A DNA stretch of 64,000 nucleotides from assembly GCF_032062105.1 (NCBI RefSeq), contig NW_026931583.1:372001-436000 (forward strand), written 5' to 3'. Position 1 is the first letter of the stretch; every line of letters begins with the position of its first letter. Shown here one piece after another: positions 13,001 through 35,329 of the stretch. The notes beneath the pieces were generated by a model. It made no database searches and had not been told where the DNA came from. It saw only the letters and a program-made list of their open reading frames with translations. Source of the DNA: Saccostrea cucullata. Lineage: Eukaryota. A program made the position numbers and the translations under genes.

Positions 13001-16000
13001 CCCAATTTCTTCGTTACCGAAAGCAAAAACAGGAAATAGCATTACGTAAGAAAACTGGAAACCCTTCACACAGAAGTTCAATTTAGGAAGTATCTTTTTG
13101 ACTTCTCTCTTAGAATAAGGGTCTTATAGCACTACATCTGAGGAGTTTTTATAGCATTGTTTGCCATATTTTTTTGTTAAAAAAATGGTTTTGACTAGCA
13201 GCCTTTTCATTTAATTACAAATATAAATTAATATGGCTGCATAGATTAGAATAACAATTCATTGAGAGTTCAAGAACTTCTATATTTACTAAAACAATCC
13301 AGAGTTTTCTTATGACCTTAAAATATTTGTTTGTTGACTTTTTTTTTTTTTACCAATAATGGATTGTAAATTAGAATTGAACTTTTTGCAATATTTGATT
13401 TGGTCAATACTTTAAAAACTCTTGCACTTATGCAATTTCATTTCCGGTAAGAATTTGATTTTGAGGAGTTCATAATAAGTAAAGGGACAATTAATTCAGG
13501 TTTTTAAATATGCAGATATTCAATGTACATACACTAGTAATTTCTCCTGGTAGTGTAAAATAAGCTTTTAGAATTTATTTACTCATATAAATAGCTATCT
13601 ACAAGACCACACCTTTGAACAAAGGTAAAACTATTGATTTCAGACAGAATTAATGTTTGGGTTAATTACAGGTCTGGTATGAGGGTATGAATACATTACT
13701 GAGGGTCAAATACTCAGGTACATTAATAAATGGCCACCTGACCAGTGTAACCTTGATTGGGACATCGGCAAACCTATATATAGCATCTGCGTATTTTCTT
13801 TTCATACATGCATGCATTTTAAAAATTGATTTTAATTTCACACACACTCACTATGATTAAGGGGGGAGGGAGAGATTATCTATTTTTTAGTTTTACCCCC
13901 CACCCCAAACTTTAATCTTTGGTTTAATAAACCCAGGAATATGTTAAGAATTTTTACTTACTCGTAGAATGGCTAGAATGACCTTGGAGCGCCCAGACTG
14001 GACGGCCACTGTACTGATAGTCGTAGTTGAGGGGGGTAATTCCGAAAGATCGGTTATGTCCGATGCTCTGTCTGACATTTTGGTTTTTTCAATGGATGAT
14101 TAAGCACATGTGTAGCAAAAAAGCAGCAAAACACTGTAAAGGGTTTCACTAAAGTACTGGGTCCAAAATTTTGTATCTTTTTTTAGGCATTACACAATAG
14201 CATACAATAGGCATGCATGCAGAAGACTGGAATGGCTCTTTATCACTTCACAGTCTCTGCTCTTCTCAACCTCTTCAAGAGAATACCTATCACTATATAC
14301 AACTGCTTACTGGACCAGTTCATCTCCAGCCTCCCCTAGGGGGGATCAGCATACACCACTACTTCGTTAAATGTTTGCTTTCTTTAAATATCACTCTCAA
14401 TACTCATGATTTTAATTAGTATACTTCTTTCATAAAGAACCCTGATTAAAAACCTTGTATTTGAGATAAATAGTATTTTAAAACTTCTAAAGTTAAAGAT
14501 TCATGCTTATGAAACAGACTGATCCCCCTGTTGTGTTAAGTGATTCTACCCAGGAGGTCACATGACATTCCATCCCCCCAATATGGTAAGTGGTTCTTGA
14601 TGTAAACAGACATGGGTAACCAGCCGAGCTGTGCCTTCTGTCTGTAGGAGCTTATGTAATGTACGTCTTATCTACTGATTCTCTCTCTCTCCTCATAAAT
14701 CACATGTCAAACTCAAATCACTGCAATGTGATTTTTAATAAATTAGCTTTAATAATTTTCAGTATTTTTAGAACAAAAATATTAACATGTGAAGGGCTGG
14801 GGGAGGGGGGTGGGGGGTGGCACAAGTCATCATACAATCAATTTATAAGATATTTCAAAATAAAAATTAAATTATTCTCTTATATAGTTTCTCAAACCTA
14901 CATTTGTTCCATTGTAAGAACTGCAGAACCCAGATACACAGAATTAATTGTATTATTTTTACTAGACAAAATTAAACGTTTATTGATGATCTGCATAGAA
15001 CTTTTCTATTTCAAAAACTTTAACTTACATAAAACCAACATTTATCAATTAAAGGAAAAACATATTTTCAAAGTATATAAATTCCAGATAAATATTTTCT
15101 ATTTTAAACACTTTTAGAACCTGTGCCAAAATACAGAAAGAAATTCACTTCTAGAAGCAGCTTCTCAAAAAAAAAGGTTGTTGAAATATCTCACACATCA
15201 CAAGCCAAGATAAAGCTGTTTGATTTTCTGAAAATGTTACTTTGATATCTACAAGAAGAAATCTCTGGCAGAATAAATTAAGAATCAAGATAGGTTTAGC
15301 AAGACCTCAAAATGAAAGTACATTCAATTGAATATTGTTTTATTATGACTCATTTATATCAATCAGTCCTATAGGGCTTCTGTGTCATGATCTGGCAGAG
15401 GAGGTACTTTTTTTTTTTGCTAAATACTTCAGAATTTGAATTAGCTTCATTATTTGATTGGGAGCAATAAGAGTGCATATGCCAACCTGCAAATCCATTT
15501 TTTCTGGCTTTTAATTGCTCCAAATATAACTGTCAAAATGTACATGCATGTATTTAAACTAAAATATGTATATCCATAATACAAAAAAGTCAGAGTGGCA
15601 TGTTTCCAGAAGTCTATGATATGAAGAGAGCTAGGAAGCTGGATTCTCCAAGAGCTGCTACATCCAGTATGTACTAGAGTCCATATATCAGTGATAATAC
15701 CTCAGATTTAGACATTTATTGTAGATGTACTGTTATTTTCTGATCCTGGCAGCCATTAAGCAGTACTTGTACTTGTGCCAGAGTTTTTAGCGACACTTGT
15801 TGATCTCTCCCTCACACACATAATATACGTATACAAGTTGTATCACTACGTGTATAAACTGTGTTCTGTGTAAACCCTCTCTGACAAGACAATGCCCTAT
15901 ACCAAGAACACATGTGTTTTGAATATATCATCTATTAATGTATTTGAATTTACATACAATATGGCAACTCTGCCAGGTTAAACCAAAAAAAGAACATGGG

Positions 16001-19000
16001 CAGCTATAGATTGAAATGTTAAAATTGCCAACAACTTTATTAATGATTTTTTATCTATCCATTTGTAATCTACAAAATGCTATATGTGGGATGATCACCA
16101 ATCAATCTTCATCTCTACTGAAATGATTAAGTATTACTTCATTCTAAAACTAGATATCATTCAGGTGGTGATCATTTTGAATAGTTCCAGTTTTGGTAAA
16201 CTTAAATACGAGAGCAAATGGAACTTGCTAGTGTTGCGATATTTCTTACATATGTAAAATAGTTTTTGTACAAGGCCGGAGAACATTAATTTCCAGCAGT
16301 GCTAATATTTTTTTAAAGATGAAAAAATTGCATAAATGAGAAAAAACTTTTCATTCTATCCAGAATTTTGTAGCTCATATTAATTAATACCTTCTTGGAA
16401 TGTTGGAGTTTAAATAAAAATCTGTTTTGACCATGACCTTTGATGAAATTGAAGTGCAAACACTGCAAACAACCTTTATCCAAGGTCTTCACTATTGAAA
16501 TGTAAACCAAATGAATGTATTCTATGTGCAGAAATTATAAAGTAAAAGACAAAGATTCAGATAAAGAGAGCTACTGATCATACTGAACAAAACCTGATTT
16601 TCTAATATTTCCATTCTCTCAAAACACTTTCACACATGTATTTCTTTTATTTTCTAATACCCTTACAAAATGACCCCCTTCCTTTATCAATTAAATTATA
16701 ACTTAAGATAAATGTACTTTAATTTTTTAGAGCAAACTAAAATACCCTGACTGCACATGCAGACAATAGGTTCTCTGCTAATAAGAATGCAGGTAAAATG
16801 TCAAAATATTAACTGGTCTAACAGATAGAAAATAATTATTCCAGCCAATAAACCTCAAAAACTATCATCATTAGATGGAAATAATTATATTCTATTCAAG
16901 CTACATGCTCGTCGCTGAGTAACATGCAGATGATCATGTTCTTACATTACTTGCAGTTGCAACATTAGTGAAGTGCAAATTGATAGAATTTTTGTGATGA
17001 GCTCATAGCAAACACATAATGGTTCATCATCTGATGTTATGCAATTTACTTTATTTCATCTGACAACCATTATAATTTAGCTAGGATAGTCCATACAACA
17101 TTACAGAGCACATACATGATGCCACATTTTTTTTCAATTCTTACCTCTTCCAGCTGTTGTTTGAGGGTATTAGGGGATGAAGGCCTAAAATTCCTTGGGA
17201 GACTCTGTGCTTTGGCATTGACTGGTTGACTATAGCTGCTGGTGACCAGCCCCTCCCTAACTGGGGGCTTTACATTGTGATGAAGGGAACCAGATCTCTC
17301 CGGAGGTCTGGGTTTTTCCCGAGTTCTGACCGCCCTCTCTGGGGCTATTGGCTGATTTCCGAGGTCTGATGTAGACCGCCTCTGTCTTTTTTGTGAAGAC
17401 TGTGGTTTGTTCCTACCAGCATCATACCCTGAGAACGTCTTTGTGCGGGATGGCTGCCGTTTACGAGATTCTCCGTATTGCACTGCTGACGGGGGTCTTC
17501 TAGTCCGCTCCATTTCAGACCAGTACCGGTTCAGATCCTTTGTCTTTTGTTCCATTTTTGTAAGTTTACTGCTAATGACCTCCACAGCCTCATGGTCATC
17601 CAAACTTAAAGTCTTCTCCTTCCTGAATTACCAAAAAATGGATTAATAAAATATATTCAGAAGTCAAATTGATGCTATATTATAAAATTGTAACAATAAG
17701 GTCAAAGGTAATTGGTCTTTCCATGGAGGGAAACATACTGCGGTTAGCATTTGGATTTCATTACACAAAAAGTCAGAATTTTTGACAACCCAACATTTGA
17801 AAACACAAAGTTATTAAGAAATGATAAAAATCCTTTTGTTATATGTTTACAAGTCTTCTTTTAATCATTAAATTTGTCTTGGAATTATAATAAAGTTACA
17901 ACTTTGCACATTTCCCTTGTACTGGCTTTTGAGACTTACCCCTCAGTGAGTATTATTGGCATGGCCAGCCTCTCTAGCAGGGCCCGCCCCATACGATCCG
18001 TCTCCTGGTGGTCCCTCTCCACCTGACCTTTGATCGGTGTGTATTGTTTGAGGATGTCTGGCACAGTGGCCTCTCCTGACATTGTCCAGGAAATTGGAAT
18101 CAGAAGGTCATCCACTCGATCCAGAATCTGTTAACGGATCAAAAATTGGTAAATACATTTTCAAAATTAAGTCTTAAAAAAATGACAAAAAAAATAATTA
18201 AATCTGAAAAATTCTCATTTTGAAAAAAATAATGGCTTCTCGGATGTATATTTTTGAATATTTCTAAGCTTATTTATTAATGTATTAAACAATCTGCTTT
18301 AAAACGTAAAATGCTCATTGCACTTGTACATACAGTAATTAGGGTTTACTAGGACTCTAAATGACCGTTATCGTCTGTGGCAGTGTTTATACAGTAATTA
18401 TCGTGACCAAGCACCTGGGGTACCTGACCTTTCTCACCTTCGGCTGTCTTTCACCCTTATTTTTTGTCTGGCTTTAATTATTTGTTTTCACTGAACATCG
18501 TTTAAATCCATTACGTTTAAATAAATTTGATAATTTTGTCAATTCTCCGAGAAGCCGTAATTAAATTCTCGGGAAAAGAGCGGATGATATTACACGTGCG
18601 ATTGTTGATATGGCTGTGTTTGATTATATGCCAATACAAGTGGTTGAAGGCAAAGGCTTTAAAAAAAACGATGACCATCGTTGCACCAAACTACAAAATA
18701 CCGTCCCTTAATATTATAAAATCTAGGATTGAAAAAGTGTACGAAAATCGTAAATCCGCTCTGTTAGGAAAACTTTATCAAGTTCAAGTTGATCCTGTAC
18801 GTAGCTCTGACGACTGATGCCTTGTCGTCAAACGCGAGAAAGAGTTACATTACAATTACGGAGCAGATTATTTTTTTTAAACAAAAATACTGTGAACAAC
18901 TTTTGATTTTATTTCTTGTGTTTATTTGATAAATAAATTTAATTTTAAAAAATGTTATATTAAATTTAGTCGGGCACGAAGTGTTCATCATCATTATTAC

Positions 19001-22000
19001 AACAGAAATACATTTACGGAAAAGCCTCACATCAGTTTTATTTCAACAAGAGTTTACAATTTTTTACAGTCTTCAATTTACTTGTTCATATTTATTTACA
19101 CTTTTACCATATCCCGGGTCTGATGGAAAAACGTCCGAGTAACCAAGTATTGAAAATTGACCGATTTGACATCCCTAGTAAATACATTTTCAAAATTAAG
19201 TCTTAAAAGAAATGACAATAAATAATTGCATATGAGAAATTCTCTTTTTTTTTAAAAAATAATGGTTTCTAAAAAATGTTTTCTGAAATATGTGAACAAT
19301 TCCATACTTTGTCAGCTGATGCGAGGAACATGGCTGACACGGTGAGTCTGTTGGCTCGCTCGTTGGTCCCCTGTGAGAATCTTTTCCAGGCTTCCTCCAG
19401 TCGGTGAGATCTCTCATTATTCGGGGCCAGGTCGTATCTCAGTGACCGACGCAGAACCAAGCCTGCTTGTAGCAACTGCTTCCCATACTCATAAGTTCCC
19501 TACAGTAAATAGATTTAAGCTTAGAATTAAAAATACAGTAGTTGAAAGATACAATTTTTTACCATAGGTATGATTAAAGGAAACTGAAATGATTGTATTT
19601 TGTAGCTGTTAACATGTAATATAAGTCTTGAAAATCTATATTCGGTCATATTTTTGTACAATGTCACAGAAAAAGAGACAAAGCATTAAGTTCTACACAG
19701 AGTACAATCCCCTTACAGCAGCTGTGGTCTCGAACTTCTTGTGCTCAAGCTGGAGGTTCTCTGCCTCCTCCTGGGTACTCCCCATACTGGTGTGGGTGGC
19801 TGCCATCACCTCACACAGCTCCAGGATCCAGTCTATAGCCTAGGGGGACAAATAAAAATCTGTTAACCTCCATATCTTTCGGTATACAGGGAAATTTTTG
19901 CCCCCATGTTATTTTTGCCCCTTTCGCCCTCTTCCTGACAGGGCGAATTTAAAATGGTGTGAGTTCAAATTACACAGCATAATATCATAAACAAAACTAC
20001 AACTGGACAAATTTAAAATGGGGCAAAATAGTTTGCAAATGCAAAAGGGTGAAAATAAGCCTGTATACAGTATACAGTTGATCCTTGTAATCCCAAAGAC
20101 TGATACCTCGAATACCATGGATATGTTAAAGTGACTTGGAAGTCCCCAACCCTTATTCCCTACATCAGATATCTCACACATTTTTCTTGAACCCATTCAG
20201 TAAATGAGATTTGATTGAACATGTTATCATAATTACAGGAAAATTTTAGATTCTTGACAGTACTTATTCAGCAGTGAAATCAACCTTCCATAGCAAAGTT
20301 TTATATGACACTCCTGTACCTGATCAGCGTCCCTTTCACAAGTGCGTAGTTGAAGTATCTGTTGTAGTTTGAGTTTGCGGACATCAGACAGTTCGTCACA
20401 GCGTAATTTTCTCTCCTGGAGGTCCTCCAGTTTCTTCTGGACGTGTTTAATCTGTGAGGCGTAGTCTGGGGTGATGTCCTTACCCATGGCATTCTTGACA
20501 GGGCGGGACATTTCATCCAACAGGCTCTGGCCATCATCCAAGGTCTGCTGAGCCAAATTGTCTGGAGAGGACAATAAACGAAATGTACAGTTAATGTTTA
20601 TTTCATTTTCTTAGGACAACTTTCACTATAAGAATGATTGAACATATTTTATTTTAAAAATTTCAACAGTAGTTGAAATATGGTACCATATTAATTTATA
20701 ACAGGGGACTGTTTATAAAAGTCTTCAAATGAGATACACTACCCATCTCTAACAAAAGGATACTTTTTTAATTTAATTATTAAATACATGTAAATGTATC
20801 TTAATTTTTTTTTGATTGAGGGATACTGAAGAAAGACCTATGAATCTCTGTATACAGTACCTATATTTTCACATTTGTCATTGAGATTCTGAATGGCTGC
20901 CTCAGCAGAAGGGACATCCTCAGCCTCTATCTCACTACACAGCATCTCAAGTAGGTCATCCAACTTCACAGAAAACTGGGGAAAAAATAAGACACTCTTT
21001 ATATAGTCCTCTTACAAGATTTTCAATGATTGGAAGCTAATACTGTTGAATCTTTCTCAAAAAATATCTTTTCTGATATATTACAGAAAAGATGTGTGAT
21101 TAAGGAGAATTCAAAAGTTTTCTGCCAATACACGTTTTTTTTTATCAAAACAGTGGATGACATTTGTTTTTAATGGTCCACCAGTCCTGTACTAACCTCT
21201 TCTGCCAGTCTGTGGAATCGTACGGAGGTGATCAACAGAGTGCGTCGACGTTCCAGTCGACTGGCGAAGCTCCGGCAGACCGTGTCCATGTAGTCCCGGG
21301 TTGACCTGATGTCCGCTGTGGCTGGATGTTCCTCACTGATCAGCTCCTCCGCTGTGTGTCGCAGTTCTGCGTACTGACCATACGTGTCCTGAATGACAAA
21401 AGAAATACAGTTGTGTATTTAAGTGTAGTGTTTGCTGAAAATTAACTCATGTTTTTTCAATCAGTAGAAGAGCCATGAAGGATTTATCATAATGTTATTT
21501 TATTTTTCAATGCAATACATAACATTTCCAGTGATTTGCACCTTAAGAACAAGTGACAATGAAGCATAGAAAACTCTGAAACCCAATAAGGGTAGCCAAT
21601 TCTTTGCATTTTTACAAGGTTCTTTATCTAATAGTTTACTTTATTCATATATACAGAAATTTTACTTTTTAATAATGTAGACAACACACTTATGTGTGTC
21701 CATGAAAACAACACAAAGATATCAGAGAAATAAGATATAAGTCCTACTGTGCATTTGATTTCCATTTCTTCATGTCTTTTCCTCAGTTCCTCAGCAGCAT
21801 GGTAAGAATCCCCAATCCCCACCTGTGAGGCCAGCAACTTCTCCCCAGGACCAAGAATCCAAGTCACCACCTACCAAATTATCAAGTAATCTCGATAATA
21901 GAGATTGTTCTGATACCTTATTGATGGACGCCTTTAAATAATTCATCTGTACGTTTTATTCTAATACACAAAATATTACAAAATGTATGTGCATTGGTAC

Positions 22001-25000
22001 ATTTCCATAGTTAAACCCCGAAAAACCAACAAATTTTGGGCCAATCTTAATTTCTTTCAAGCTTCAAAAAATAGAACTGAAGCCCATCCAAATTCCCTAG
22101 AAAACTAAGACTCACATTTTTGACGTTTCTCTGGAAGTCCTCGTAGTGTAGGTTGAGATTGAGTGAGCGATCTCGGTCCTCCAGTAGGTTCTGTAACTTG
22201 TCTACGCGGTTCTCTAGGTACGTGATCAGCCGCTTCACCTGTTTCTGTTCCTCAAGGTTATCCAGCGTACTCGCTGTGTCCTCCTCCGAGTTCCCCGGCC
22301 TCTTAAGTCGGGTCAAAAGGTCACGACCTGCAAAACAAATTCAGGAAAATTTACAAAGATTTTTATTGAATGTCAAAAAGTATGTGTATAACTTCAGTCA
22401 CTGTTACTATTTTATCTGTTTTGCTATGCATCTCACAAAACTGACATACATAGTATTTTTAAGATAAAGATTTATACTTGTAAAAAATAAGCTGTCTGCT
22501 ATTTTTTTTTTAAATAAGCAAATATTCCTTTAAAAGCATTAAAAGTACTTTTGATTAAGTATTAGTTGATGAAAAATGATTTAATCATAAACAAAGAATG
22601 CTTCTTTTGTACAACTTCAAGCTATAACTTTCAAACAACTTTCCATCAGAAAAAAAAATATTACACTGAATCTGGCAATATTTTATGCACTGAACTATGA
22701 ATTACAACCAAATTGAATACTACATGTACAAAAAATAATTTATTTGTTCATGCAAACAAACTCCAAAATGAAAAAATAAATGCATTTCCAAACTGGCACC
22801 AAACCTGCAGTCTTTAGTACATCATCCCTGTTAATAAATTTCATATGAACTTCTACTTTATCAAATTTTACTTTATCAAATATGATGTGTTTTGAAACAA
22901 ATGCACCCCCTCCCTCTCCCAAACAGCTGTTGTGTGGATATATTTGACCAAATAACTGTTGTTAATAGGGAAAAATACAGCTGTCATCCTGTTCAAATGA
23001 ACCTAAAATCAAAAGCTATCATCTCACTTTATACAAAGTCTCTAGGTTGCTTTGCTTCAAAATTGGATATAACTTGGTACAATGATGTAAAAAGACAATG
23101 GCTAACAAATCACTGCATGGTCTAAAACTCATAGGAATAAACATTACAGACATATTTATCTATTTGGGTGATATGGCTATCTTCGAAATTTCAGCTTACA
23201 ACGCTTGAATCAAGTCATTTACATGTGTAGAGTATATAATAACATTGAATGCCCTTAAAAGATTACAAGAAGTGGGTTTTACTTTTCTTATCTTCCCAAA
23301 ACTTATTGCCCTGATGTTAAGGATGTCTTGAGGATTAAAAAGACCAGACCAGGTATTTAAATCCAGATATCCATATCATTCCAAACACTAACATCCATAT
23401 ATATCTGACTCATGTATACATAATATAATAAAAAAGAAGAAAAAATATGTTCTGTACATTCATCAAATACAAACCATGATCTTCCAAGATAGGAATTGGG
23501 ACAAATTTGTCTGAAAATTACATGAATCTCAGTAAAACTAGAAACTGATAAGAATTTCATACAAAACCATTTTTCAAGTGAACCATATTTAGAATCATGT
23601 TTAACTTGGCGAAAACATTTTTTTCTGTAATGAGGCTTTTGTCTCATAAATGTAAAAAATCTTAAGAAGCTATTCAAATTATAAATTGAGAGAGAAAGGG
23701 ATGAGAGAGAAAAAAAAGACAAATGTGAAATAATAATGAGATTATACCGTCGCGTATGACTTGGGTGGGGACACTCATGATGGACTCCTGGAAGAAGCGG
23801 TGCTGACGGAGGGACTCCAGGGGACTGGTCAGGGTCTCCTTCTGGGAGTATACCTGGTGTATCTGGGTCTCCGAGTCGTCCAGGTGTGACGAGGCCGCGC
23901 GCGACTCACGGATAAACTTCTCCAGGTCCTACAAAAAGACCAGATTCATTCCAACACCTCTATCAACATTTTTATAGGTATATCATTTAGAGGGGATTTT
24001 CAATTTACTATGAATGCAAAAAGGATATATTCAAATCTAGTGACAGGATTGAGATTTCAAACTAGTGCCATTCTGCATTCTACGATATGGACCAAATTGT
24101 TTACCAGTGTTTGGGCATCAGGCTAGTGCTTTTGGTCCAAACTGAGCCAATTTTAATTGAATTTCATATTAAACAAGCAAAAGGACTTACAATTCTGTTT
24201 TGGAGCCACTCATGATGGTTGTACCACAGCAGTCCTCCATAACTGTGAGTCAGCTGATTCTTATCTACGTAAGTGTACAGTCTCTGGAGATTTACAAACT
24301 GGGGCTGAAATATCAATAGAAAGAAGGCATATATATCAGTCTTCTCTAATTTCTGAAATTTTTTTACATAATTTCTCAAATATAGCAAGTTCAACATTAA
24401 CTTTCAGTCCTATCCTCACCTCTAGGTTTGGGTTGTTTCTGTCTCTCCTGAAGCTGCTACTACTGGACCGTCTGTCCATCTGTTGGTCAGCCTTCAGTAC
24501 TAGCACTTGCTTCATGTATTCTCCAAGAGATTGCTGAAAAAGAATGTTTTGTTGTAATGTTGGGAAATTTGTAATAAATTTCATTTTATTGTCATTAATT
24601 AGACTAGAATTTCTTTTTAAAAAAATCTTCAATTTATCTTTACAAAAACAGTTTATAGCAAATCACAGCAATAAATTTGTTAATTGATATCTAAAGATTC
24701 CCTGGGTGTTTCCTTACTTTGAGACAGCCCAGCACTGTGACCAGGTTCTGCCAGGACCCATCTCTACTGTCCACAATAGCTGTGAAGCCCCGCCTCTTAG
24801 ACTCCTCACTGAAAAGTTCATCAAAACTGCCAATTAATCAATGTCTTCAATGGGAATGAGTATCTCCAAAAATTTTGTATCACGAAATATCCCAAATGTA
24901 TATAATAGCATGACTTTTATTACACCTAATTTTTACTATGATTTCAAATGAATTTTCAAGTTTTTTCCAATAAATTTTGTGTAAAAATGTAACTTTGCTT

Positions 25001-28000
25001 TTCATTTTTATTTTACATGCTACTAAAGCATGTTTGTTTGCTAAGATTCTATTTTTTTTACTGTTTTATACATGTAATATTTTTACAATTCTTGTAATTA
25101 TAATTCAACATCGAGTCTGAAAAAAATGTTAATTATTTCTGGATTTATAATTACAAAACATTACATATTGTGATACACCATATCACAATATGTATCATGC
25201 AAAAAAAAATCACGATATACAGGTATATTGATAAAATAGCACATCCCTAGTCAGGGATCGACACTAACTTTAAAACCATAGTTGCCAGCAGGGATAGCCA
25301 TTTCTAATTTCCACTAGCCCTGTTTATGTATTAGTTGTCCAGCAGCCAAAGGCTGGTGGCCGAGTCACGAAGCGATGAGGGGGGTAGGTGAGGGAGGGGT
25401 CTTTCCCCTCCTGCTGGTGGGGGTACGGGGGGCCTCCCCCGGGAAATTTTGAAAATAGAGATACCAAATCCCGCATTCTGGCTGTATTTTGGGTAAAATT
25501 ATGTCACTCTATGATTGTACCTAAGACATTTTTCTGTTCAAAAAATTCCATATTTATAATCATTTAGGGTATTTCGAATCACCTTCAAAGTTTTACATTT
25601 TGACTTACAAAAATAATAAGTATGACGATAAAACATATGTTTGAAATTAAATTTAACAATGATCAGGTACATTGTGTGTAAATTATAATTATTTTTGTTG
25701 CTCTGAGTGAGTGTTTGGTAAAATTTACAGTAGTCCTGCAGGGCATGTTTAGTATCCTGACCTCAATATTCACTTGTCCCGGGCCAGCGGGCTACCGTTA
25801 GTATCGAACCCTGCTAGTCTTCAACAATACAAGTTTGTAATTGAATCTTAAATATTAGTCCTAAACAAGCAAAAAGTCTTTAACATTTGTGTAAAAAAAA
25901 TGTATAAACAATGACATATTAACATAGCTTTCAGGTATTCATCCTCGATAAGTATTATTTTAATATGTGAGGTAAAAAAAAGTTAAAGATGTATTGTGGT
26001 TTTGAAAAAGTTGCAGTACTTTTGCAAATTGTGTTAAAAGGGAGCTAACTCTGAAATTCAACCACTAAGTCTGGATATATAATGATAAAGCTCCTAAATA
26101 TTGTGTGGGTGTTCCTCAGATATCTTAAAAAATGTCCTTAAAGTTTTTCCACTAATGTGACTTTTAGATGATCTTGTTCAGATAAAGTGCCTTGGCCATT
26201 GTTCTGCCCTGAGGCTGCTTGTTTACAGCCAGGTTAAGCATGAAATAACCGTCCCTAATCTACGGACAAACATCAGACACGGTCTGAGGACAATGGTACA
26301 CGGGATTATCTAACATACCTAGACTTGTGTGTGTAGATCTCTATCTTGTTTACTTACTGCTGATTGTAGAAAACATTAATAACTCAATCTCTTATCGGAG
26401 TACCTGCTGTTTTATAACCAGGTGTAGGAGCTCGTAAATTTTGTAAATAAATATTTACTTTTCTACAGGATGTCCTACCCTTTTTGCTACAGTGTATTGA
26501 CAATTGATTATATACTCAAATAAATGACCAGTGGTTTACTGGGACAATACTAGCTGGGGGGAGCATTCCTTTTTCAAAAGCCAAACAACAGAGGCATAAA
26601 GAATATATTGTATTATGTGTCACAAGCAAAAAACTTAAATGTACAAATTCAATTCTACTGCAAACCATGTGCACCAGCACTCTCAAAACCAAGAGATTTG
26701 TTTTGTCAACATAATACAAGATTCTTGATTAACTTTGACAGGTATAATAATGTATTTGTGACAATTTTTCTGTATTTACCAGCATGGGCATTGGTATATC
26801 TCAATGATTTAACTGAAGTTAATTTGAGCTGGTTACCTTACCTGGGTATCTGAGACAGGTACTTGAGGCAGATATTGATGTCATGTGAGTTGTATGTAAG
26901 CTGGTTACCTTACCTGGGTATCTGAGACAGGTACTTGAGGCAGATAGTGATGTCATGTGAGTTGTATGTAAACTGGTAACCTTATCTGGGTATCTGAGAC
27001 AGGTACTTGAGGCAGATAGTGATGTCATGTGAGTTGTATGTAAGCTGGTAACCTTACCTGGGTATCTGAGACAGGTACTTGAGGCAGATAGTGATGTCAT
27101 GTGAGTTGTATGTAAGCTGGTTACCTTACCTGGGTATCTGAGACAGGTACTTGAGGCAGATAGTGATGTCATGCGAGTTGTATGTAAGCTGGTAACCTTA
27201 CCTGGGTATCTGAGACAGGTACTTGAGGCAGATAGTGATGTCATGTGAGTTGTATGTAAGCTGGTAACCTTACCTGGGTATCTGAGACAGGTACTTGAGG
27301 CAGATAGTGATGTCATGTGAGTTGTATGTAAGCTGGTAACCTTACCTGGGTATCTGAGACAGGTACTTGAGGCACATAGTGATGTCATGTGAGTTGTATG
27401 TAAGCTGGTAACCTTACCTGGGTATCTGAGACAGGTACTTGAGGCACATAGTGATGTCATGTGAGTTGTATGTAAGCTGGTAACCTTACCTGGGTATCTG
27501 AGACAGGTACTTGAGGCAGATAGTGATGTCATGTGAGTTGTATGTAAGCTGGTTACCTTACCTGGGTATCTGAGACAGGTACTTGAGGCACATAGTGATG
27601 TCATGTGAGTTGTATGTAAGCTGGTTACCTTACCTGGGTATCTGAGACAGGTACTTGAGGCAGATAGTGATGTCATGCGAGTTGTATGTAAGCTGGTAAC
27701 CTTACCTGGGTATCTGAGACAGGTACTTGAGGCAGATAGTGATGTCATGTGAGTTGTATGTAAGCTGGTAACCTTACCTGGGTATCTGAGACAGGTACTT
27801 GAGGCAGATAGTGATGTCATGTGAGTTGTATGTAAGCTGGTAACCTTACCTGGGTATCTGAGACAGGTACTTGAGGCACATAGTGATGTCATGTGAGTTG
27901 TATGTAAGCTGGTAACCTTACCTGGGTATCTGAGACAGGTACTTGAGGCAGATAGTGATGTCATGCGAGTTGTATGTAAGCTGGTAACCTTACCTGGGTA

Positions 28001-30526
28001 TCTGAGACAGGTACTTGAGGCAGATAGTGATGTCATGTGAGTTGTATGTAAGCTGGTAACCTTACCTGGGTATCTGAGACAGGTACTTGAGGCAGATAGT
28101 GATGTCATGTGAGTTGAAGCTGGGGTTGACAGGTTGAGGGGGAAAGGTCAGCACTGGTCCTCCTTGTCTGTCCCTCCCTCCTTTAATATAAGGTCAAGGT
28201 CAAATCAATGTTAACCCATAAATCATTATTCTAAATATTTACATGTGTAGTTCTACACTGCACGTAATATTTCTCTAATTATGGTAGTCATAGATTTAAT
28301 TTCAAATTCAATACATTTAGTGTCTAAAACAAAATTAACTATTCTTAACATATGAGAATATTCCATTCAATTATAATGCTAAGTATAATGTCACTGTATG
28401 TATATGTATCAGATTTCTAGCTGCATATTTATTTCAGTCAACGTGGAGACAGTTTTCTGGATTGCTGACAAATACAAGTGTATCAATTGCACAGGCATAG
28501 GTTTTGAAATGACACTTAATGCTGATAATGTAATGTGTTGAAAAAATTCATCTGTGCATTATCACCCTATGTAATATGCATAAGGTTGGCTGAAATCTAA
28601 GAGCAACACAACGGGTATATACCTGTAAGGTAGACAATCTCTGTTTTCAGGATTTCAATGATGTGAGAGGCCTCCATTCCTCGGGCTGTCAAGTAAAAAA
28701 GAATTTTGGTATAGATCAAAATAATCTTAATTTTAGTCACAAGTAAAATATATATCTTCTGGCATACATAAAAAGACCATTTTCCTACTTCAAAGTTACA
28801 AATATATATTGATATATAATTGATTCAATCTTGTCTCTGTAGAGACTTCCAACATTCAAAGAAAAAAACACTCCTAAAGCATTTCAATTTCAAAAAGTTA
28901 ATATGGTTTTCAAATTGACTGAAAATTTAGAGGCTCTGAATATGATAATATTATATATTACATGTCTATGAATTTATTGAAGGAAGAGAGCTAATACACT
29001 ATGCATGCTCTGTATTTTGATCATGCCAGCGTTTGCCAAGTTCCCAATCCTATATCCTTACACATATAATGTGACATATTGGCTTAATGTGACAACAAGG
29101 TCATTCATATACTGTGTTTGTAAAATATTTCACTTTTATAATAGGATTAATTCTGCTTTACAAAAGATAGATTAAATTCATAAATGGTCAAGTAGACATG
29201 ATTTATTCTATCAAATGTGGAATGTTTTCTATTCAAAAACCATTGATTTCAATGTCAGCCGCTGATAAACATACACTGAGTGTAATGTCTGTTAACTTTG
29301 ATCAGTTTTTAAACAAAACATGGTCAGTCATCAGTTTATCAGTGAATTTGGAAATTCAAGTACAGATACATCATACATGTATTTCACACAGTCATTAAAC
29401 CACATGATTTAATGTGGTTGTTTTGTTGAATGCTTTCAAGTCATATGTATTGTTGTGAACTATCAACCTAGACTTAGCATCATACTAGAGAGATTTTCTG
29501 CTTCTTTTCACAGTAATTGGTAACCACCTCATAACACCTACCTTCAGGTATTGGGTGAGCACCACTCCCCGAGCTGGCCAAGGACATCTGACTCTGAGTG
29601 CTCTGCTGAGTTCGAGTGCTCCGCTGAGCGTGTGAGTACTCACTCCCCTTCCGCGACATCATGGGTGTGGTGTGTGGTGGACTCGCGGCGTCCTTCCTGG
29701 AAGGATAAGGTGAGGTCTGGGACCTCAGTGATCTTCTAGAATCATGTGTGGAGTACCCATTCTGTTTAGGGGAGTACTGAGGGCTTTGGTGGGAGGCTGT
29801 GATTTGTTCTGGCTCCCTCTGATAGGGAGGGGGACCTTCACTGTCCTGGCGAAGGATGGGTTGATTGGGTAGGTATTTGGGAGAGGTTGATTGTGGACTA
29901 GTTTCCTCAGGGTAGAGTGACCTTTGACCCTGAGGTGAGGATGGAGATGGCTGATTCTGTGCATAATTTTGAACTTTTGGTCTAGGACCAGACACAGATC
30001 TCTGGCTCTCACTACGAACTAAGTTCCATTGCTGATCAAGACTCAAGTTCTGGAGACTGACAGGTCTGGATAAGTTTGACCCTTCATTTGTCTTCGGTCT
30101 GATTGGCTGATAATGTGGCTTTTGATTGGTTGGTGAAGATAAGTTTTGTTGACTGCTGTACTGTGATTCGTTCAACTGACTTTCATCACCTCTGATTGGC
30201 CGATATGCTGGTTTGCTGGATTTTTCTTGTGGTCTGATTGGCTGGTATGTTGGCTTAGGAGAAATCTGTTGGCTTCCATAGTGCTGTTTCTCCATTTCAT
30301 GACGGGAGAGATTTGGCTGGGACACATACTTCTGGGTCTGTGCCTGACCAGATGAATGGCCTAGGATCTGGGATTGACTCCTAGGATCCTGGCGAACTGA
30401 TTGGGTGAGGTTGGAGGGTTGGAGTCTGTGATGGGATGAATAAGGGTCATAACCTGGGGGACCCTGCAGAGAATGGTGGCTCCCCTGTCGTGACAAGTTA
30501 GGGGCAACACCACCCTGATAGGCCAT
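36..30526 (-). CDS. Giant SEC14 + spectrin-repeat + Ig-domain protein (SESTD1/CCDC141/titin-like; zormin/sallimus-type). 38 coding exons in the window, 3' end beyond the window start.
   Basis: Hand-spliced exons, all GT-AG and phase-consistent: 30526-29542, 28685-28623, 28180-28066, 24808-24718, 24533-24420, 24304-24191, 23928-23748, 22327-22116, 21870-21748, 21388-21197, 20975-20861, 20561-20320, 19839-19717, 19499-19308, 18127-17940, 17622-17145, 11251-11129, 7972-7781, 7569-7461, 7262-7018, 6729-6610, 6417-6028, 5886-5773, 5565-5443, 5338-5147, 4954-4784, 4430-4257, 3912-3787, 3423-3235, 3040-2864, 2458-2309, 2180-2058, 1890-1699, 1584-1401, 1275-1157, 1065-941, 811-591, 332-36. No internal stop. 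The 17145->11251 junction is inferred. Confidence 0.85.
1157..11251 (-). CDS. CCDC141: CCDC141-like spectrin-repeat exons (19 exons)
   Basis: GAEWIRVRVHQMEPDLTDVGSTLEEALQLRQEHNEMLAKLK / ...ENRSQADVYAAMAETLNEAW... resembles the recalled CCDC141 N-terminal region (..[23 protein letters not shown] ..VYDAMAETLGEAW); followed by many W-containing spectrin-like helical repeats. Confidence 0.85.
10900..11128 (-). repeat. Degenerate tandem copies of the 3' end and donor of exon 11129-11251 inside the following intron
   Basis: Plus strand ggactcactttgagttaagcgagcatttgattgtgtt and ttgagcttagcaagcatttcatt..gtgttcttgtctgtcagtt resemble the exon end gaactcaccttgagcttggcgagcatttcgttgtgttcttgtctgagtt. Confidence 0.7.
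12192..12300 (+). mobile_element. Degenerate tRNA-derived (SINE-like) fragment
   Basis: tRNA-like A-box gtagctctgtgattcgagcacctgactagt and a degenerate B-box region, ending ..ttcctgttaca. Confidence 0.4.
13962..14078 (-). CDS. CCDC141: Internal alternative first coding exon encoding a CCDC141-like N-terminus (MSDRASDITDLSELPPSTTTISTVAVQSGRSKVILAILR)
   Basis: AAAATG start at 14078; in-frame TAA 8 codons upstream with no AG in between; phase-0 donor CGA|GTAAGT at 13962 joins exon 11251 in frame; peptide resembles recalled human CCDC141 STTTVSSVAVQAGDSKIVIAVIK. Confidence 0.8.
17145..23928 (-). CDS. Spectrin-repeat exons of the SESTD1-like half plus an R/S/P-rich linker exon (17145-17622)
   Basis: Helical repeats with spectrin signatures (VVTWIL..GIGDSYHAAEELRKRH; AIDWIL..MGSTQEEAENLQLEHKKFE); ORFs 22047, 21628, 20233, 19269 and 17070 overlap these exons. 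Confidence 0.85.
18340..19177 (+). mobile_element. Degenerate hAT (ZBED-like) transposon remnant in an intron
   Basis: Frameshifted peptide DYMPIQVVEGKGFK/..APNYKIPS..IEKVY../VALTTDALSS..SYITIT (hAT catalytic TTD-W region); right end GACATCCCTA is the reverse complement of a hAT-type TIR TAGGGATG. Left boundary approximate. Confidence 0.75.
19880..20069. mobile_element. Short Tc1/mariner-type MITE
   Basis: Inverted ends cggtatacagg / cctgtatacag-TA with internal inverted ttttgcccc / ggggcaaaa motifs. Confidence 0.6.
24191..28685 (-). CDS. SESTD1: SEC14/CRAL-TRIO domain exons, SESTD1-like (5 exons)
   Basis: Spliced peptide MEASHIIEILKTEIVYLTGGRDRQGGPVLTFPP...LKYLSQIPSEESKRRGFTAIVDSR...QLTHSYGGLLWYNHHEWLQNRI matches the recalled SESTD1/Trio-type SEC14 pattern (MEAS..., GGxD, YLxxIPSE, GFTxIVD, GGxLxYxHxxWL). 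Confidence 0.85.
25252..25813. mobile_element. Non-autonomous TIR element with a 5-bp TSD (hAT5-like)
   Basis: TIRs CAGGGATCGACACTAAC / GTTAGTATCGAACCCTG; CTAGT flanks both sides (25247-25251, 25814-25818). Confidence 0.8.
26827..28116 (-). repeat. 72-bp minisatellite, 18 copies, made of the exon 3' end plus the 5' splice site
   Basis: TGGGTATCTGAGACAGG recurs every 72 bp from 26843 to 28067; copies nearly identical; the rightmost copy lies in coding exon 28066-28180. Confidence 0.97.
29542..30526 (-). CDS. First coding exon: ~328-aa Q/S/P-rich low-complexity N-terminal extension
   Basis: ORF 29480..30529; acceptor TTTTCAG just before 30530; ATG at 30526; phase-1 donor GAAG|GTAGGT at 29542 joins in frame to exon 28685. 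Confidence 0.8.
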
Positions 30527-31541
30527 CACTCTGAAAATAGATATGCAAAGGAAAATACTGTATTAAATGTAGCAAGCAAACTGGGAATATGTAACCTGCA
30601 TCCAATCATATCAAATCTGATTCATTGTTTTTTACCTTTAAAGTCATGGAGTTCGCTGAGCTATTCATGCATTCTCAACAAATCTTTCGTCAAATTAATG
30701 ACACAATATCTGATAACCAATTTACTATTCTCAGTGACATCATTTACATTTTGTACCTAAACTGTGCATATCGTTCTTTACGAATGTAAAGCATTTGACA
30801 AGAGTATTTGCATAAATGATCTTGGATTTTATTGTCAGTTCTAGAGTTTCAAGTACAGGAATTGATTCTTCTACAGTGTGAATATATATGTATATAACAC
30901 TGCAGTATACACCTTGATCAAAGACTGTCAACATTGAATTTAAAATACAGGTTGGGAAATTTTTAAATAGTGCATATTTTCAAGGTTGAGTAATCACGAC
31001 AAGGATAATTTCCAGTAGCGTTCCATTGAAGACGGCTATTTTATGTATGGGAAACCCTAGCCTCTACACTCGTAAATGACAGCATCGGGGGTTTAGTCGC
31101 TGTGAGATCTTCTTTCTAAAGCAATTTAAAATTCTGTCTTCTTAAACTCTTTGTTAGTCTGCTAATTCAGTAGCTGACAGATCTAGATAACAATTTATTT
31201 TTCTTATTATCTAATAAAAGATAAATAATTCTGATACATGAAAGCTGAGACATTACAAATGGAACATTTATATCACAGCTTGAAAACATCACAGGCCTGT
31301 GGGCCTTAAAGGCCACCTAAGAGTAGTATATATGTCTGTTATGAGTTTCTCTTGATATGACCAACTCAGCCACTAAGGTACTGAATTGCATTAATTTTCA
31401 ACTTTGACTGATGTTCACTCTCATTCTAGTTATCTTGATCCTATGTCATTAGGAGTGCAATATTGAAGAATCTGAGAAATAAATTTATTCAAACCTCGTT
31501 ATCTCAAATTCAATGGGACTTCATAAGAAAAAAAAGATCTA

Positions 31542-31716: not shown

Positions 31717-32785
31717 TATAATCCTGAAGTTCAAGATATCGAGGGTAAAATACTCGAGAAATATACATGGTTGCATGGATCCCCCAACCACTTCGACATA
31801 TATTATTCCATTGGTATACTGATTACTGAAGTTCAAATAATGTACATGTACTACAATGTATATGATACCAAGAATAGCCAATGGAAACTCAAAAGCTTAT
31901 TTCCAATGGGGGTCCTTTGCATGGATGTTGGCATGGGGGGGGTCATTCCTAAAGGAGGAAACTACTATACAGCATCCAAAGAAATTCTGCATGTTCAAGT
32001 GGCATTTACCTCTGCCAATCACAGAGATTGAACTCAGATTTTAGCACTTGAGAAGCATCGAGTGCACTACCAGTACAATTTAATTTAATATGTAGATTTT
32101 AAAGATGCTCATATCAAGGATATGATACCTACTAGCTCCCCTCTCTCATCTGTGAACTTGGAACAAACAATATTTCACAGATCAGCAAATAAGTAATGAC
32201 TCAGATGTCCTCAAATTATAAACCATGATAGAAGTAAATGTCTCAATAGTGTACAGTTTTGACTACAGAAATGACCTTGGTACACATACCAGGTATGTAA
32301 CTCAAAAACTATAAAAGGCCTCCCCTTTTAACAAGTAATTAACATTCAATGAACTTTATTTTTACCTGACAGATAATTGCTGTGATTAATTTTATCTTTA
32401 CAATCTGCATTATACAGCTCTGGGTAATGATGTCGCAATTGTCAATTTACTCCATTACCTAAACCCTCCAAAGACTAACTTGAATATAGGGCTCAATTGT
32501 CCACAAGGAATGCATTCTAATGTCCTCTATCCAAGAATAAGAGGAAAATTTACACTGCAGTAAACATTTAAAAGTAAGGTTAGCAAAGAACATGATCATA
32601 AGGTTTCTACACGCACTGAATGATATATTTTACACAAATTCAGGAGAGAGTAAATCATAGCAAGGACAGAGAAGAAATTCTATACAAGCAGAAGTCTATA
32701 AATAAGAGGTATTTTAATTGTTATGAATCAGTGTTTATTATCATGCATCACAGAACGAAGGAAAATGAATCATCATATTGCATTA

Positions 32786-32982
32786 CTGTAGATTCCTAAT
32801 TATACGCGAGGAATTAATTTCCACGTAATTACGCGAGGAGCATCACTCGCGAAAAAATATTACTCACTTTTATTTTCATGGTGCTGAAATCTATGTAAAT
32901 TCCATTAATCAACCGTCGATTCGCGAATTATAATTCTCGCGATCTGACGTTGAAGTACTCGCAACAAATAAGGAATCTACAG
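32786..32982. mobile_element. MITE with TA TSD (Tc1/mariner-like)
   Basis: TA-CTGTAGATTCCT..AGGAATCTACAG-TA; internal CGCG-rich repeats. Confidence 0.8.
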
Positions 32983-35329
32983 TAATCATTATATTAAAAT
33001 CACACATTGGTCATAGGTAGTACATGTATACAGCTTTCTATTTATGCTAAATACTATCTCGATCATAACACATCGATACTGATACTCAATTTGTAGCATT
33101 ATCATACCTACATGTAATTTCTCATGTCTTTGAATTAATTTTGTTTCAATTATAACCTTAGAAATCTGTAAAATTTACAGCACAATTAACTATTTATGAC
33201 ATATTGTTTTCAGTGTTGGGGCCTAATATTGTTACATTGATTTTGTGTTAAATTTGTTCAGAGCTAGTGATATGCATGCAGTTTTGTAATTATTATCTCA
33301 CCAAGAAGTCTGACAGGTGCATTCTTCTAGAACAGGATATTGTCCTATCAGATTATCCGTATATTGTTACTGGCGTTCCATTAATATTTGACCATTTTCA
33401 TAACTTTACTTTTGGGGGGGGGGGGGGGGGGGGGGGTTGAAAAAACTACAGAGGATAAAATCTGATATATAAAATTGTAATTTTCTACAGACATACAGAT
33501 CCAGTCCCTTTATATACCTGGTACCTACACCTCTTTACATCTACGTGTGAATATTACATGATTTAGTCCTACAACTTCTACTCCAAACTGCAGAATAATG
33601 GGAGTGGGACATTGGGGGGGGGGGGGGTTAGGGGGGCACTCTCTGTGCATAACCTCTATAAAACAACAAGTATTCTTCAAATTAGCTGTCATACATTGAT
33701 CTAATAATGATTAAAATTGTCAAAATAATATTCTTATGTGGCTGGTTCTCAGGAGAAGATGCAGACTTTGCCACTAAATTTAACAGAGCCTGAGGGGTAT
33801 GGCCATGCAGACAGACCCTTTGGTCTGGCAATCTTATATATAATGTATCTGTGTGGAACCCTCCCAGCTATCTTTTCCTCTTTCCTCCCTGTTTTTTTTT
33901 CCCACTAGAACTTACATGGTGTACTTCTTCTACAAGGACAGAGTCCTGCATGCTCAGTCCATTAACACTAAAGATTCCCAAATGTTGGCTTTATTTTCTG
34001 TGTCTTGCACAAAGCCTATACCTCTCATGAAAATAAACATCTGAATAAGCAGTGCACTCAATAAACCCTTCAATGAAACTTATAAGGCTACTGATTACAT
34101 TACTCCTTACTAATACTAAATTCATACAACATTTATTGTAGACTTTAATAGTGATTGTCCATACATTGTATCATACATATTAAAGCACTGATTCAGAAAA
34201 CATTTGTTTCATTTTTACGAGTTGATGGCATCAACTCAAGTTATGTTACTGGTAAGGGATTCCCCATGTATCGAAACTAATCACATTTTCGTTTGAGTAT
34301 TTTGCATACAGATTCTTGTATAATATTGGCTTATTTACAATATTCATGATCTACAGAATAAGAATATGTTTCCTGATATGATTTGAAGTGTTTATAAACT
34401 TAAATACTTATTATTTTATTTTTTTGGAATTTGTGTCAATCCGCGAGAGAAAATAGTGCAAGGGGCATGCAGTCAAAAATTGTGACATGTCGTGCAAACA
34501 AAGTTTTGATTTTTAAGTCAATAAATACTAGTATTTCTAACTATTTCAACTTATTTTAAGTAATTTGAAAATAGATTTTGAAAGAAAATTTACACAATTA
34601 AATATTGTACAAACCAGGTTATTTTTACAAGACTGACGTGTTAGTGGTATATAAATAAACTAATCCTTGCGCTGATCTAGTATGCTAATGACCAGTGCAA
34701 TTTTCCCGCGATAACTAGTGATGAAGTATTTATATATAGAACACTACTTATGTTTGTAAACAAAGCGAGAAACACCTAGTTAAGAGGGATAGTCAAAGTG
34801 AAATCAAATATTAACCTGAAAGGGAAGAAATGAACTGTACCAGTTGATAAAATATTTTTTATGTAAATGCCATTACTTCTTGTGCAAACAATAAAAGAAC
34901 CACTGTCTTCCACAATTTAGATCTGCATCACAGCAAGTTTTAATTACAGTAGAGGTCACTTAACATGCCTGTTATTCTTATCTTATTGTCTGCGCTACTT
35001 TAGAAAGAGAGTTCCTTTACTATATCCAGCTGTGTCTTACCATCAGATGCTGGCAATGTGATACAGTGAATTAATTTAAAGTACAGAAGACAGTAAAAAA
35101 ATAACCAAAAAAAAAAATATATACAGAAAGATTAAATCGGGTGTTATTCATAAATAAAATGAGAAATGTTTGTTTATAAATGTTAATCAAGAGACTGAAA
35201 ATTCAAATATATTCAATAGTAAATAGATTATGTAAACGATTAATATACCATGCCATTGTGATAAAGTTTTAGTCTTCAGTCAAAAAGCCAAAAAGAATAA
35301 AATTATTAATCCTTCATGAATTTATCAAT

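What the first reader, a model, noticed from the sequence alone, without database searches (positions are those of the whole stretch)
13962..14320. Internal promoter and first exon giving a stand-alone CCDC141-like isoform
This 39-codon exon is too short for the ORF track. It has its own ATG, an upstream in-frame stop and no acceptor, so it cannot be an internal exon of the long form. It encodes STTTISTVAVQSGRSKVILAILR, close to the recalled vertebrate CCDC141 start. Inference: the CCDC141 promoter existed inside an intron of the long gene before any fission, marking the breakpoint. A TATA-like TATATA lies on the minus strand at ~14294-14299.
Basis: partly seen in the sequence, partly recalled or inferred. 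Interest (0 to 1): 0.75.

Follow-up and report, generated by a model that had tools for sequence, protein, structure and literature searches.

The report
First exon of CCDC141-like gene
This short exon is the conserved start of a bivalve muscle-protein gene (CCDC141/titin-like) lying just downstream of its neighbour SESTD1, to which it is probably also spliced; this layout was already proposed for the ancestor of titin.

Summary
On the minus strand, 14078-13962 is a 39-codon ATG exon with an in-frame TAA 8 codons upstream, no AG in between and a GTAAGT donor. Its peptide matches residues 1-39 of named bivalve models (Mytilus 92%, Pinctada 87%) and the N-terminus of 30 of 30 named vertebrate CCDC141 proteins retrieved. 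Upstream exons are SESTD1-type and downstream exons CCDC141-type.

The last SESTD1-side exon (17622-17145) has no stop. It ends in phase 0 at a GTAAGA donor that fits exon 2 (11251) in frame. Fourteen gene models from 12 other species join SESTD1 to the exon-2 peptide, and 13 of them lack the exon-1 peptide. Stand-alone SESTD1 models mostly end by reading through that same donor.

So an alternative first exon inside a SESTD1-CCDC141 unit is likely. The TATATA is uninformative.

The evolutionary idea is largely in print as "connectitin" (PMC12198301). The scan's only related notes are on this same window. Verdict: real, sound annotation, moderate interest, a new member of a known kind.

The parts
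13962..14078 (-). Exon 1 coding part: ATG plus 38 codons, the N-terminus of the stand-alone CCDC141/titin-like protein
   Evidence: It matches residues 1-39 of Mytilus P0210 (92%) and Pinctada P0208 (87%), and the N-terminus of 30 of 30 named vertebrate CCDC141 proteins.
13956..13961 (-). 5' splice site GTAAGT of exon 1 (phase 0)
   Evidence: Read-through stops after 5 codons.
14100..14102 (-). In-frame TAA eight codons upstream of the ATG
   Evidence: Read. There is no AG between it and the ATG.
14079..14320 (-). Presumed 5' leader and promoter region. The TSS is unknown. TATATA lies at 14294-14299, and five out-of-frame upstream ATGs lie at 14218, 14214, 14203, 14190 and 14109.
   Evidence: No CpG enrichment (CpG o/e 0.09-0.11 for 14101-14600). 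No RNA evidence.
11129..11251 (-). Exon 2 (41 codons, phase 0-0), shared by the short form and the putative long form. It begins the first spectrin repeat.
   Evidence: It is 97.6% identical to Pinctada P0208 residues 40-80. The same peptide lies internally in the long models.
17145..17622 (-). Last SESTD1-side exon (low-complexity linker). It has no stop and ends ...QQLEE in phase 0.
   Evidence: It matches Pinctada SESTD1 model P0167 residues 818-931 and Haliotis long model P0173 residues 316-396.
17139..17144 (-). 5' splice site GTAAGA, which would join exon 2 in frame to give the long form
   Evidence: The equivalent position reads V then S or R in 11 of 20 stand-alone SESTD1 models in which I could place the motif by eye.
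17050..17144 (-). Read-through tail (24 codons, stop at 17072-17070) plus AATAAA at 17055-17050: a candidate composite terminal exon for a SESTD1-only mRNA
   Evidence: AATAAA occurs about once per 580 nt per strand, so this is suggestive only.
20293..20562 (-). SESTD1-type spectrin exon. It marks the upstream gene part.
   Evidence: PF24915 at 6e-21, 75.3 bits against a cutoff of 27. It is 80% identical to Pinctada P0167.
7015..7272 (-). DUF7799 exon of the CCDC141-type part
   Evidence: PF25075 at 3.3e-15, 56.6 bits against a cutoff of 27. It is 90.7% identical to Pinctada P0208.
592..867 (-). Ig I-set exon. Further Ig matches run to the window start.
   Evidence: PF07679 at 8.6e-17.

Best explanation
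The 39-codon exon is the conserved first coding exon of the stand-alone CCDC141/titin-like protein of this bivalve. It is transcribed from its own start site somewhere upstream of 14078 and spliced from 13962 to 11251. It lies in the 5.9-kb interval between the last SESTD1-type exon (donor after 17145) and exon 2. That interval most likely acts as an intron of a longer SESTD1-CCDC141 transcript, in which the 17145 donor joins 11251 in frame and skips exon 1. A SESTD1-only mRNA would end by reading through the same donor into a nearby stop and poly(A) signal. One locus would then give three protein classes from two promoters and two ends. Shown here: the exon anatomy, the homology, the phase compatibility and the collinearity with short, long and SESTD1-only models elsewhere. 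Inferred: the TSS, the existence of the long and the read-through transcripts in this species, and any tissue pattern.
For: Anatomy of exon 1: ATG, upstream in-frame TAA, no usable acceptor, GTAAGT donor.

Start of the short form: the exon-1 peptide equals residues 1-39 of Mytilus P0210 (92%), Pinctada P0208 (87%) and Aplysia P0209 (67%), each followed directly by the exon-2 peptide. tblastn with P0208 and P0210 starts exactly at 14078. The peptide also hits the N-terminus of 30 of 30 named vertebrate CCDC141 proteins among 51 proteins scanned. The core motif lies within the first 84 residues in 43 of the 47 proteins that carry it, out of 265 fetched. The initiator Met aligns across molluscs, a flatworm, a hemichordate, amphioxus and vertebrates.

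Flanking gene parts: PF24915 upstream, PF25075 and I-set downstream.

Long form: exon 17622-17145 has no stop and a phase-0 GTAAGA donor, and exon 2 is phase 0. Fourteen models from 12 species carry SESTD1-type sequence followed by an internal exon-2 peptide. These are two crinoids, Owenia, Branchiostoma, Tubulanus, Lingula, Haliotis, Babylonia, Octopus, a locust, a bee (three isoforms) and a rove beetle. Thirteen of the 14 lack the exon-1 motif. All are collinear with the window, and no other coding match lies between 17144 and 11252 except exon 1. In Branchiostoma lanceolatum the long model P0159 and the short model P0023 are 98% identical from the first residue of the exon-2 equivalent onward and differ only upstream of it.

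SESTD1-only end: stand-alone SESTD1 models end just after the same motif. V follows it in 13 of 20, and V then S or R in 11 of 20, as translation of a GTRAG donor would give. Two of these are unnamed transcript-derived ORFs, P0172 and P0229.
Against: All bivalve models retrieved are split into a SESTD1 model (Pinctada, Mizuhopecten, Tegillarca, Mactra, Sinanodonta, Solemya) and a CCDC141/titin-like model starting at exon 1 (Pinctada, Mytilus). No bivalve long model was seen, although length filters would hide very long ones. Long models elsewhere are predictions whose RNA support I could not inspect, and some may be read-through merges. The region upstream of the ATG has no CpG enrichment, and the TATATA is uninformative. 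The AATAAA after the read-through stop is expected by chance about once per 580 nt. The V/S/R tail count rests on motif placement by eye.
Confidence: 0.62

Rival explanations
1. Two ordinary neighbouring genes. SESTD1 ends at or just after 17145 and the CCDC141/titin-like gene starts at exon 1 from a normal intergenic promoter. No long fused transcript is made in this species, and long models elsewhere are annotation merges or rare read-through.
For: All six bivalve SESTD1 models and both bivalve CCDC141/titin-like models retrieved are separate. The SESTD1 models end by read-through of the donor. The window has a stop 24 codons past the donor and an AATAAA 15 nt after it.
Against: The donor consensus after the ...EE motif is kept across phyla (V then S or R in 11 of 20 models), which argues that it is used for splicing. 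No alternative SESTD1 terminal exon is detectable downstream. The phases match. The same junction appears in 14 models from 12 species, including three molluscs.
Confidence: 0.28
2. Exon 1 is not the first exon of its transcript. One or more non-coding leader exons lie further upstream, within the same interval or even at the SESTD1 promoter. The promoter is then not at 14.1-14.3 kb.
For: No TSS evidence exists. The sequence between the TATATA and the ATG holds five upstream ATGs. There is no CpG or other promoter signal.
Against: No pyrimidine-rich acceptor lies in the 620 nt upstream of the ATG. Gene models in Mytilus and Pinctada start at this ATG, though protein models say nothing about leaders.
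Confidence: 0.15
3. The TATATA at 14294-14299 is the functional TATA box, with a TSS about 30 nt downstream.
For: The motif is present on the minus strand 216 nt upstream of the ATG.
Against: There are 95 copies in 64 kb and the motif is palindromic, so it is not strand-specific. The resulting leader would carry five out-of-frame upstream ATGs.
Confidence: 0.1

Closest known systems
Vertebrate CCDC141 (CAMDI), first coding exon and N-terminus
   Same: The N-terminal peptide has the same conserved core (S-T-T-T-x-S-x-x-A-V-Q-x-G...) 11-20 residues after the Met. The same following segment begins the first spectrin repeat. DUF7799, spectrin repeats and a C-terminal Ig domain are present, and SESTD1 lies upstream on the same strand (synteny as stated in PMC12198301, passages).
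   Different: The window's gene continues into several Ig domains, as in the titin-like bivalve models of 3092-3875 aa. The upstream SESTD1-type exon has no stop of its own before a splice donor.
'Connectitin' hypothesis and KALRN internal promoters (Hanashima et al. 2025, PMC12198301; abstract, section 13 and found passages read)
   Same: SESTD1-CCDC141-titin is treated as one ancestral gene paralogous to TRIO/KALRN. [quoted passage not shown]
   Different: The paper reports the joined gene in cnidarians and placozoans and describes bilaterians as having three genes. Here, public models from 12 bilaterian species still join SESTD1 to CCDC141 at one precise junction. Its text has no occurrence of words beginning 'mollus' or 'bivalv'; Crassostrea gigas and Octopus sinensis appear only in the species keys of two tree-figure legends. 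Its supplements were not visible to me.
Drosophila sls locus (zormin, kettin and D-titin isoforms)
   Same: A CCDC141-like protein (zormin) and titin are encoded by one locus as isoforms, and an SESTD1-like gene (CG15822) lies upstream (passages of PMC12198301 and PMC12657953).
   Different: That case concerns the CCDC141-titin join, not the SESTD1-CCDC141 join. I did not examine Drosophila sequences beyond the SESTD1 hits.
Composite terminal exon with intronic polyadenylation, competing with splicing (for example immunoglobulin mu secreted versus membrane forms; recalled general knowledge, no call)
   Same: One 5' splice site is either used, giving the long product, or read through to a nearby stop and poly(A) site, giving the short product.
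   Different: Here this is inferred only from the C-termini of models and two unnamed transcript-derived ORFs. No poly(A) site was mapped.

Membership tests
CCDC141 / zormin-type protein (orthologue) | Conserved N-terminal peptide directly after the initiator Met | tested here: met
   30 of 30 named vertebrate CCDC141 proteins hit at residue 66 or earlier. Alignment. Bivalve models 87-92% identical over residues 1-39.
CCDC141 / zormin-type protein (orthologue) | DUF7799 (PF25075) plus spectrin repeats | tested here: met
   PF25075 scores 56.6 bits against a cutoff of 27 on 6991-7278. Single-exon matches to spectrin models fall below their whole-protein cutoffs. The locus is collinear with full-length homologues.
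CCDC141 / zormin-type protein (orthologue) | C-terminal Ig (I-set) domain | tested here: met
   PF07679 scores 61.4 bits on 562-867. More Ig matches run to the window edge.
CCDC141 / zormin-type protein (orthologue) | SESTD1 immediately upstream on the same strand | tested here: met
   PF24915 scores 75.3 bits on 20233-20574. Fifteen or more collinear SESTD1-type exon matches lie at 17.1-29.8 kb.
Alternative first exon driven by an internal promoter | Exon cannot be entered in frame from upstream (own ATG, upstream stop, no acceptor) | tested here: met
Alternative first exon driven by an internal promoter | Mapped transcription start (capped 5' ends) upstream of the exon | not testable with these tools
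No CAGE or 5'RACE data are available.
Alternative first exon driven by an internal promoter | A longer transcript of the same locus splices across the exon | tested here: inconclusive
   The phases are compatible and 13 of 14 long models in other species skip it. There is no transcript evidence in this species, and bivalve models are split.
TATA-box promoter | TATA element about 25-35 nt upstream of a mapped TSS, more than chance | tested here: not met
   The hexamer occurs 95 times in 64 kb. The TSS is unknown. Five upstream ATGs lie downstream of it.
Composite terminal exon / intronic polyadenylation (SESTD1-only isoform) | Read-through of the donor to a nearby stop and poly(A) signal, with mapped 3' ends | tested here: inconclusive
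   A stop at 17072-17070 and AATAAA at 17055-17050 are present. Analogous read-through tails occur in models of other species. No 3' ends were mapped.

The most novel reading that the evidence does not exclude
This bivalve locus is a living intermediate of gene fission. One transcription unit makes a SESTD1-only protein (donor read-through and intronic polyadenylation), a long SESTD1-CCDC141-Ig protein (donor 17145 joined to 11251), and a CCDC141-only protein from an internal first exon whose Met is conserved from molluscs to birds. The same three-way layout, visible in amphioxus, molluscs, annelids, nemerteans, echinoderms and insects, would be the bilaterian ground state. Vertebrates would then have split SESTD1 from CCDC141 simply by losing one splice junction, with both 'new' genes already existing as isoforms.
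Probability: 0.45. Interest if true: 0.6.

Novelty: new member of a known kind. Interest (0 to 1): 0.4.

Why it matters
If the long and short forms coexist here, the locus shows how a gene can split without an intermediate loss of function. The daughter proteins would pre-exist as promoter and poly(A) isoforms, and fission needs only the loss of one junction.

It would also extend the published connectitin idea. That paper reports the joined gene in cnidarians and placozoans and three genes in bilaterians. This window suggests that many bilaterians keep the join.

For annotation, it fixes the true start codon of the bivalve CCDC141/titin-like gene. It also warns that SESTD1 models ending in V-S or V-R tails are read-throughs of a live splice donor.

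As it stands, the exon itself is ordinary and is already annotated in related bivalves.

Tried and rejected
TSS, junctions and tissue pattern therefore stay unchecked.

2. TATATA as promoter evidence: rejected. It occurs 95 times in 64 kb, and five upstream ATGs lie between it and the ATG.

3. CpG island at the exon: none. CpG o/e is 0.09-0.11 just upstream, against a window mean of 0.50.

4. Upstream acceptor: none with a pyrimidine tract of 70% or more within 620 nt. This was a crude scan, not a trained splice model.

5. Vertebrate SESTD1 C-terminus, to fix the SESTD1 side of the vertebrate breakpoint. The third homologue search returned only invertebrate SESTD1 and two DBS/MCF2L proteins, so this stays untested.

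6. Cnidarian connectitin: not retrieved, so whether the exon-1 peptide predates Bilateria is untested.

7. Hyalella P0130 and Scylla P0222 have the exon-2 peptide internally, but their upstream parts gave no SESTD1 Pfam match or were not tested. They are not counted as long forms.

8. Macrostomum P0105 and P0154 carry the motif internally, behind collagen-like repeats. I read these as model merges.

Exons were searched piece by piece, as required.

10. I did not search the window's own genome for paralogues of the exon.

11. Supplements of PMC12198301 were not visible. They may list invertebrate accessions that already show joined forms.

12. Print check. Four searches found only PMC12198301 linking CCDC141 with internal promoters. 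Subscription-only papers are not covered.
Full report
**What is there.** On the minus strand an ATG at 14078 opens 39 codons (MSDRAS...AILR). They end at 13962 in front of GTAAGT. Reading through that donor hits a stop five codons later. Eight codons upstream of the ATG is an in-frame TAA (14102-14100), with no AG between it and the ATG. A crude scan found no AG preceded by a 70%-pyrimidine tract in the 620 nt upstream. The next exon begins at 11251 after a long T-run and CAG. It is in phase 0, has 41 codons (GAEWIRV...) and ends at 11129 before GTGAGT.

**What the surrounding gene is.** Pfam on single exon ORFs gave three clear matches:
- Spectrin_SESTD1 (PF24915, 6e-21) for 20233-20574.
- DUF7799 (PF25075, 3e-15) for 6991-7278.
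- I-set (9e-17) for 562-867.

Local tblastn of full-length homologues against the window maps about 15 SESTD1-type exons from 29.8 to 17.1 kb. It then maps exon 1, exon 2 and about 20 CCDC141/Ig-type exons down to the window start, all on the minus strand and all collinear. Between 17144 and 11252 the only coding match is exon 1.

**Is the peptide a CCDC141 start?** Yes. A library-wide search with the DUF7799 exon, followed by two homologue searches, supplied named proteins. Local BLAST used the exon-1 peptide alone.
- It hit 30 of 51 proteins in the first set. These were exactly the 30 named vertebrate CCDC141 entries (bird, marsupials, cetaceans, carnivores, catfishes), at residues 1-33 or 11/12-33. 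One upstream-extended model was hit at 45-66. None of the 21 SESTD1 or long models was hit.
- In the second set it hit 9 of 22. These include Mytilus galloprovincialis 'titin' P0210 (92% over residues 1-39), Pinctada imbricata P0208 (87%, residues 1-39) and Aplysia P0209 (67%). In each, the exon-2 peptide follows directly.
- Macrostomum, Saccoglossus and Branchiostoma models also start with it.

A motif scan of all 265 fetched proteins found the core in 47, and within the first 84 residues in 43 of those. In the alignment of N-termini the initiator Met lines up across molluscs, a flatworm, a hemichordate, amphioxus and vertebrates.

**Is there a long gene around it?**

*In the window.* The last SESTD1-side exon (17622-17145) has no stop. 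It ends ...QQLEE in phase 0 at GAG|GTAAGA. Exon 2 is phase 0, so joining them keeps the frame.

*Long models elsewhere.* Fourteen models from 12 species carry SESTD1-type sequence followed by an internal exon-2 peptide:
- Anneissia and Antedon
- Owenia
- Branchiostoma lanceolatum
- Tubulanus
- Lingula (partial)
- Haliotis, Babylonia and Octopus bimaculoides
- Schistocerca
- Frieseomelitta (three isoforms)
- Dalotia

Thirteen of the 14 lack the exon-1 motif. The residues just before the exon-2 peptide in these models resemble the end of the window's upstream exon.

*Amphioxus.* The long model P0159 and the short model P0023 are 98% identical from the first residue of the exon-2 equivalent onward and differ only upstream of it.

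*Exception.* Bee isoform X4 (P0220) differs from X6 by a 67-residue cassette holding the exon-1-like peptide at exactly that boundary. In some lineages the segment can therefore be internal. In this window the upstream TAA forbids that.

**How SESTD1 alone would end.** Of the 26 C-termini printed, I could place the ...EE-type motif by eye in 21.
- One partial model stops at the motif.
- Of the other 20, valine follows in 13.
- Valine then serine or arginine follows in 11, which is what translation of a GTRAG splice donor gives.

These 11 include Pinctada, Mizuhopecten, Glandiceps, Branchiostoma belcheri, Littorina, Biomphalaria, Patella, Argonauta and two unnamed transcript-derived ORFs, P0172 and P0229. 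The tails then stop after 2-26 residues. The window does the same: V-R, 24 codons in all, stop at 17072-17070, and AATAAA at 17055-17050. AATAAA occurs once per about 580 nt per strand, so it proves nothing alone.

A donor consensus kept at one position across phyla argues that the site is spliced in those animals. The only downstream partner seen in any model is the exon-2 equivalent.

**Mechanism I commit to (confidence 0.62).** The locus has two promoters and two ends.
- Promoter 1 drives the SESTD1 exons. At the 17145 donor the transcript is either read through to a nearby stop and poly(A) site (SESTD1-only) or spliced to 11251 (the long SESTD1-CCDC141-Ig protein).
- A second start site upstream of 14078 gives exon 1 spliced to 11251 (the CCDC141-only protein).

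Shown: anatomy, homology, phases and collinearity. Inferred: every transcript-level statement for this species.

**What speaks against it.**
- All bivalve models retrieved are split into SESTD1 and CCDC141/titin-like genes. The length filters of those searches would hide very long fused models.
- The long models are predictions whose RNA support I could not see.
- The promoter claim has no support of its own. TATATA occurs 95 times in the window. CpG o/e just upstream is 0.09-0.11 against a mean of 0.50. A TSS just below the TATATA would leave five out-of-frame upstream ATGs in the leader.
- The RNA contig runs hold 0.08-0.11 of the sampled words of the 6.6-kb stretch. The three exons make up 718 of its 6601 nt. 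This is a coincidence worth noting, not evidence.

**Comparison with what is known.** Hanashima et al. 2025 (PMC12198301) propose that SESTD1-CCDC141-titin descend from one gene, 'connectitin', paralogous to TRIO/KALRN. I read the abstract, section 13 and found passages. The paper says the joined gene survives in cnidarians and placozoans and became three genes in bilaterians. [quoted passage not shown]

PMC12657953 repeats this and notes CCDC141-TTN spanning transcripts and the Drosophila sls/zormin case (found passages read).

What the public models add is that many bilaterians still join SESTD1 to CCDC141 at one precise junction that skips the conserved first exon. The four literature searches showed no paper saying this. 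Subscription journals and the paper's supplements were not visible.

**Verdict.** I rate this a new member of a known kind, interest 0.4.

Noticed in passing
window 3632-3760 and 3787-3915 (-): Two adjacent exons match the same 43-residue segment of the Haliotis and Owenia proteins but consecutive segments of the Pinctada protein. This looks like a tandem exon duplication, possibly used as mutually exclusive exons in some lineages.
   Followed up: partly
window 26819-28108 (-): A 429-aa ORF is made of repeated units of about 24 residues (a minisatellite). It lies between SESTD1-type exon matches at 28068-28190 and 24718-24819. Another note of the scan, s1-707187, covers it.
   Followed up: no
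window 29480-30529 (-): A 349-aa S/P/Q-rich ORF has no Pfam match. It aligns weakly (38.5%) with residues 16-129 of the Pinctada SESTD1 model, so it is probably a low-complexity N-terminal exon of the SESTD1 part.
   Followed up: partly
window 47141-50036 (+): Three consecutive ORFs of 183, 535 and 152 aa look like a non-LTR retrotransposon (endonuclease and reverse-transcriptase type, judged by eye). They were not run against Pfam.
   Followed up: no
P0220 residues 1159-1225 (Frieseomelitta varia isoform X4): A 67-residue cassette containing the exon-1-like peptide is inserted exactly at the exon-2 boundary of the long SESTD1-containing isoform. It is absent from isoforms X5 and X6.
   Followed up: partly
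window 32701-33000 and 18501-18900: These have the highest CpG observed/expected values in the window (2.0 and 1.5-1.7) at low GC. The first lies upstream of the SESTD1-type exons and might mark their promoter. Low C and G counts may inflate the values.
   Followed up: no
window 11100-17700: Four RNA contig runs hold 0.08-0.11 of the sampled words of this stretch. That is about the exonic share (718 of 6601 nt).
   Followed up: no
window 56233-57000 (-) and 59692-59976 (-): ORFs of 255 aa and 94 aa belong to other, unexamined genes upstream of the SESTD1 part.
   Followed up: no
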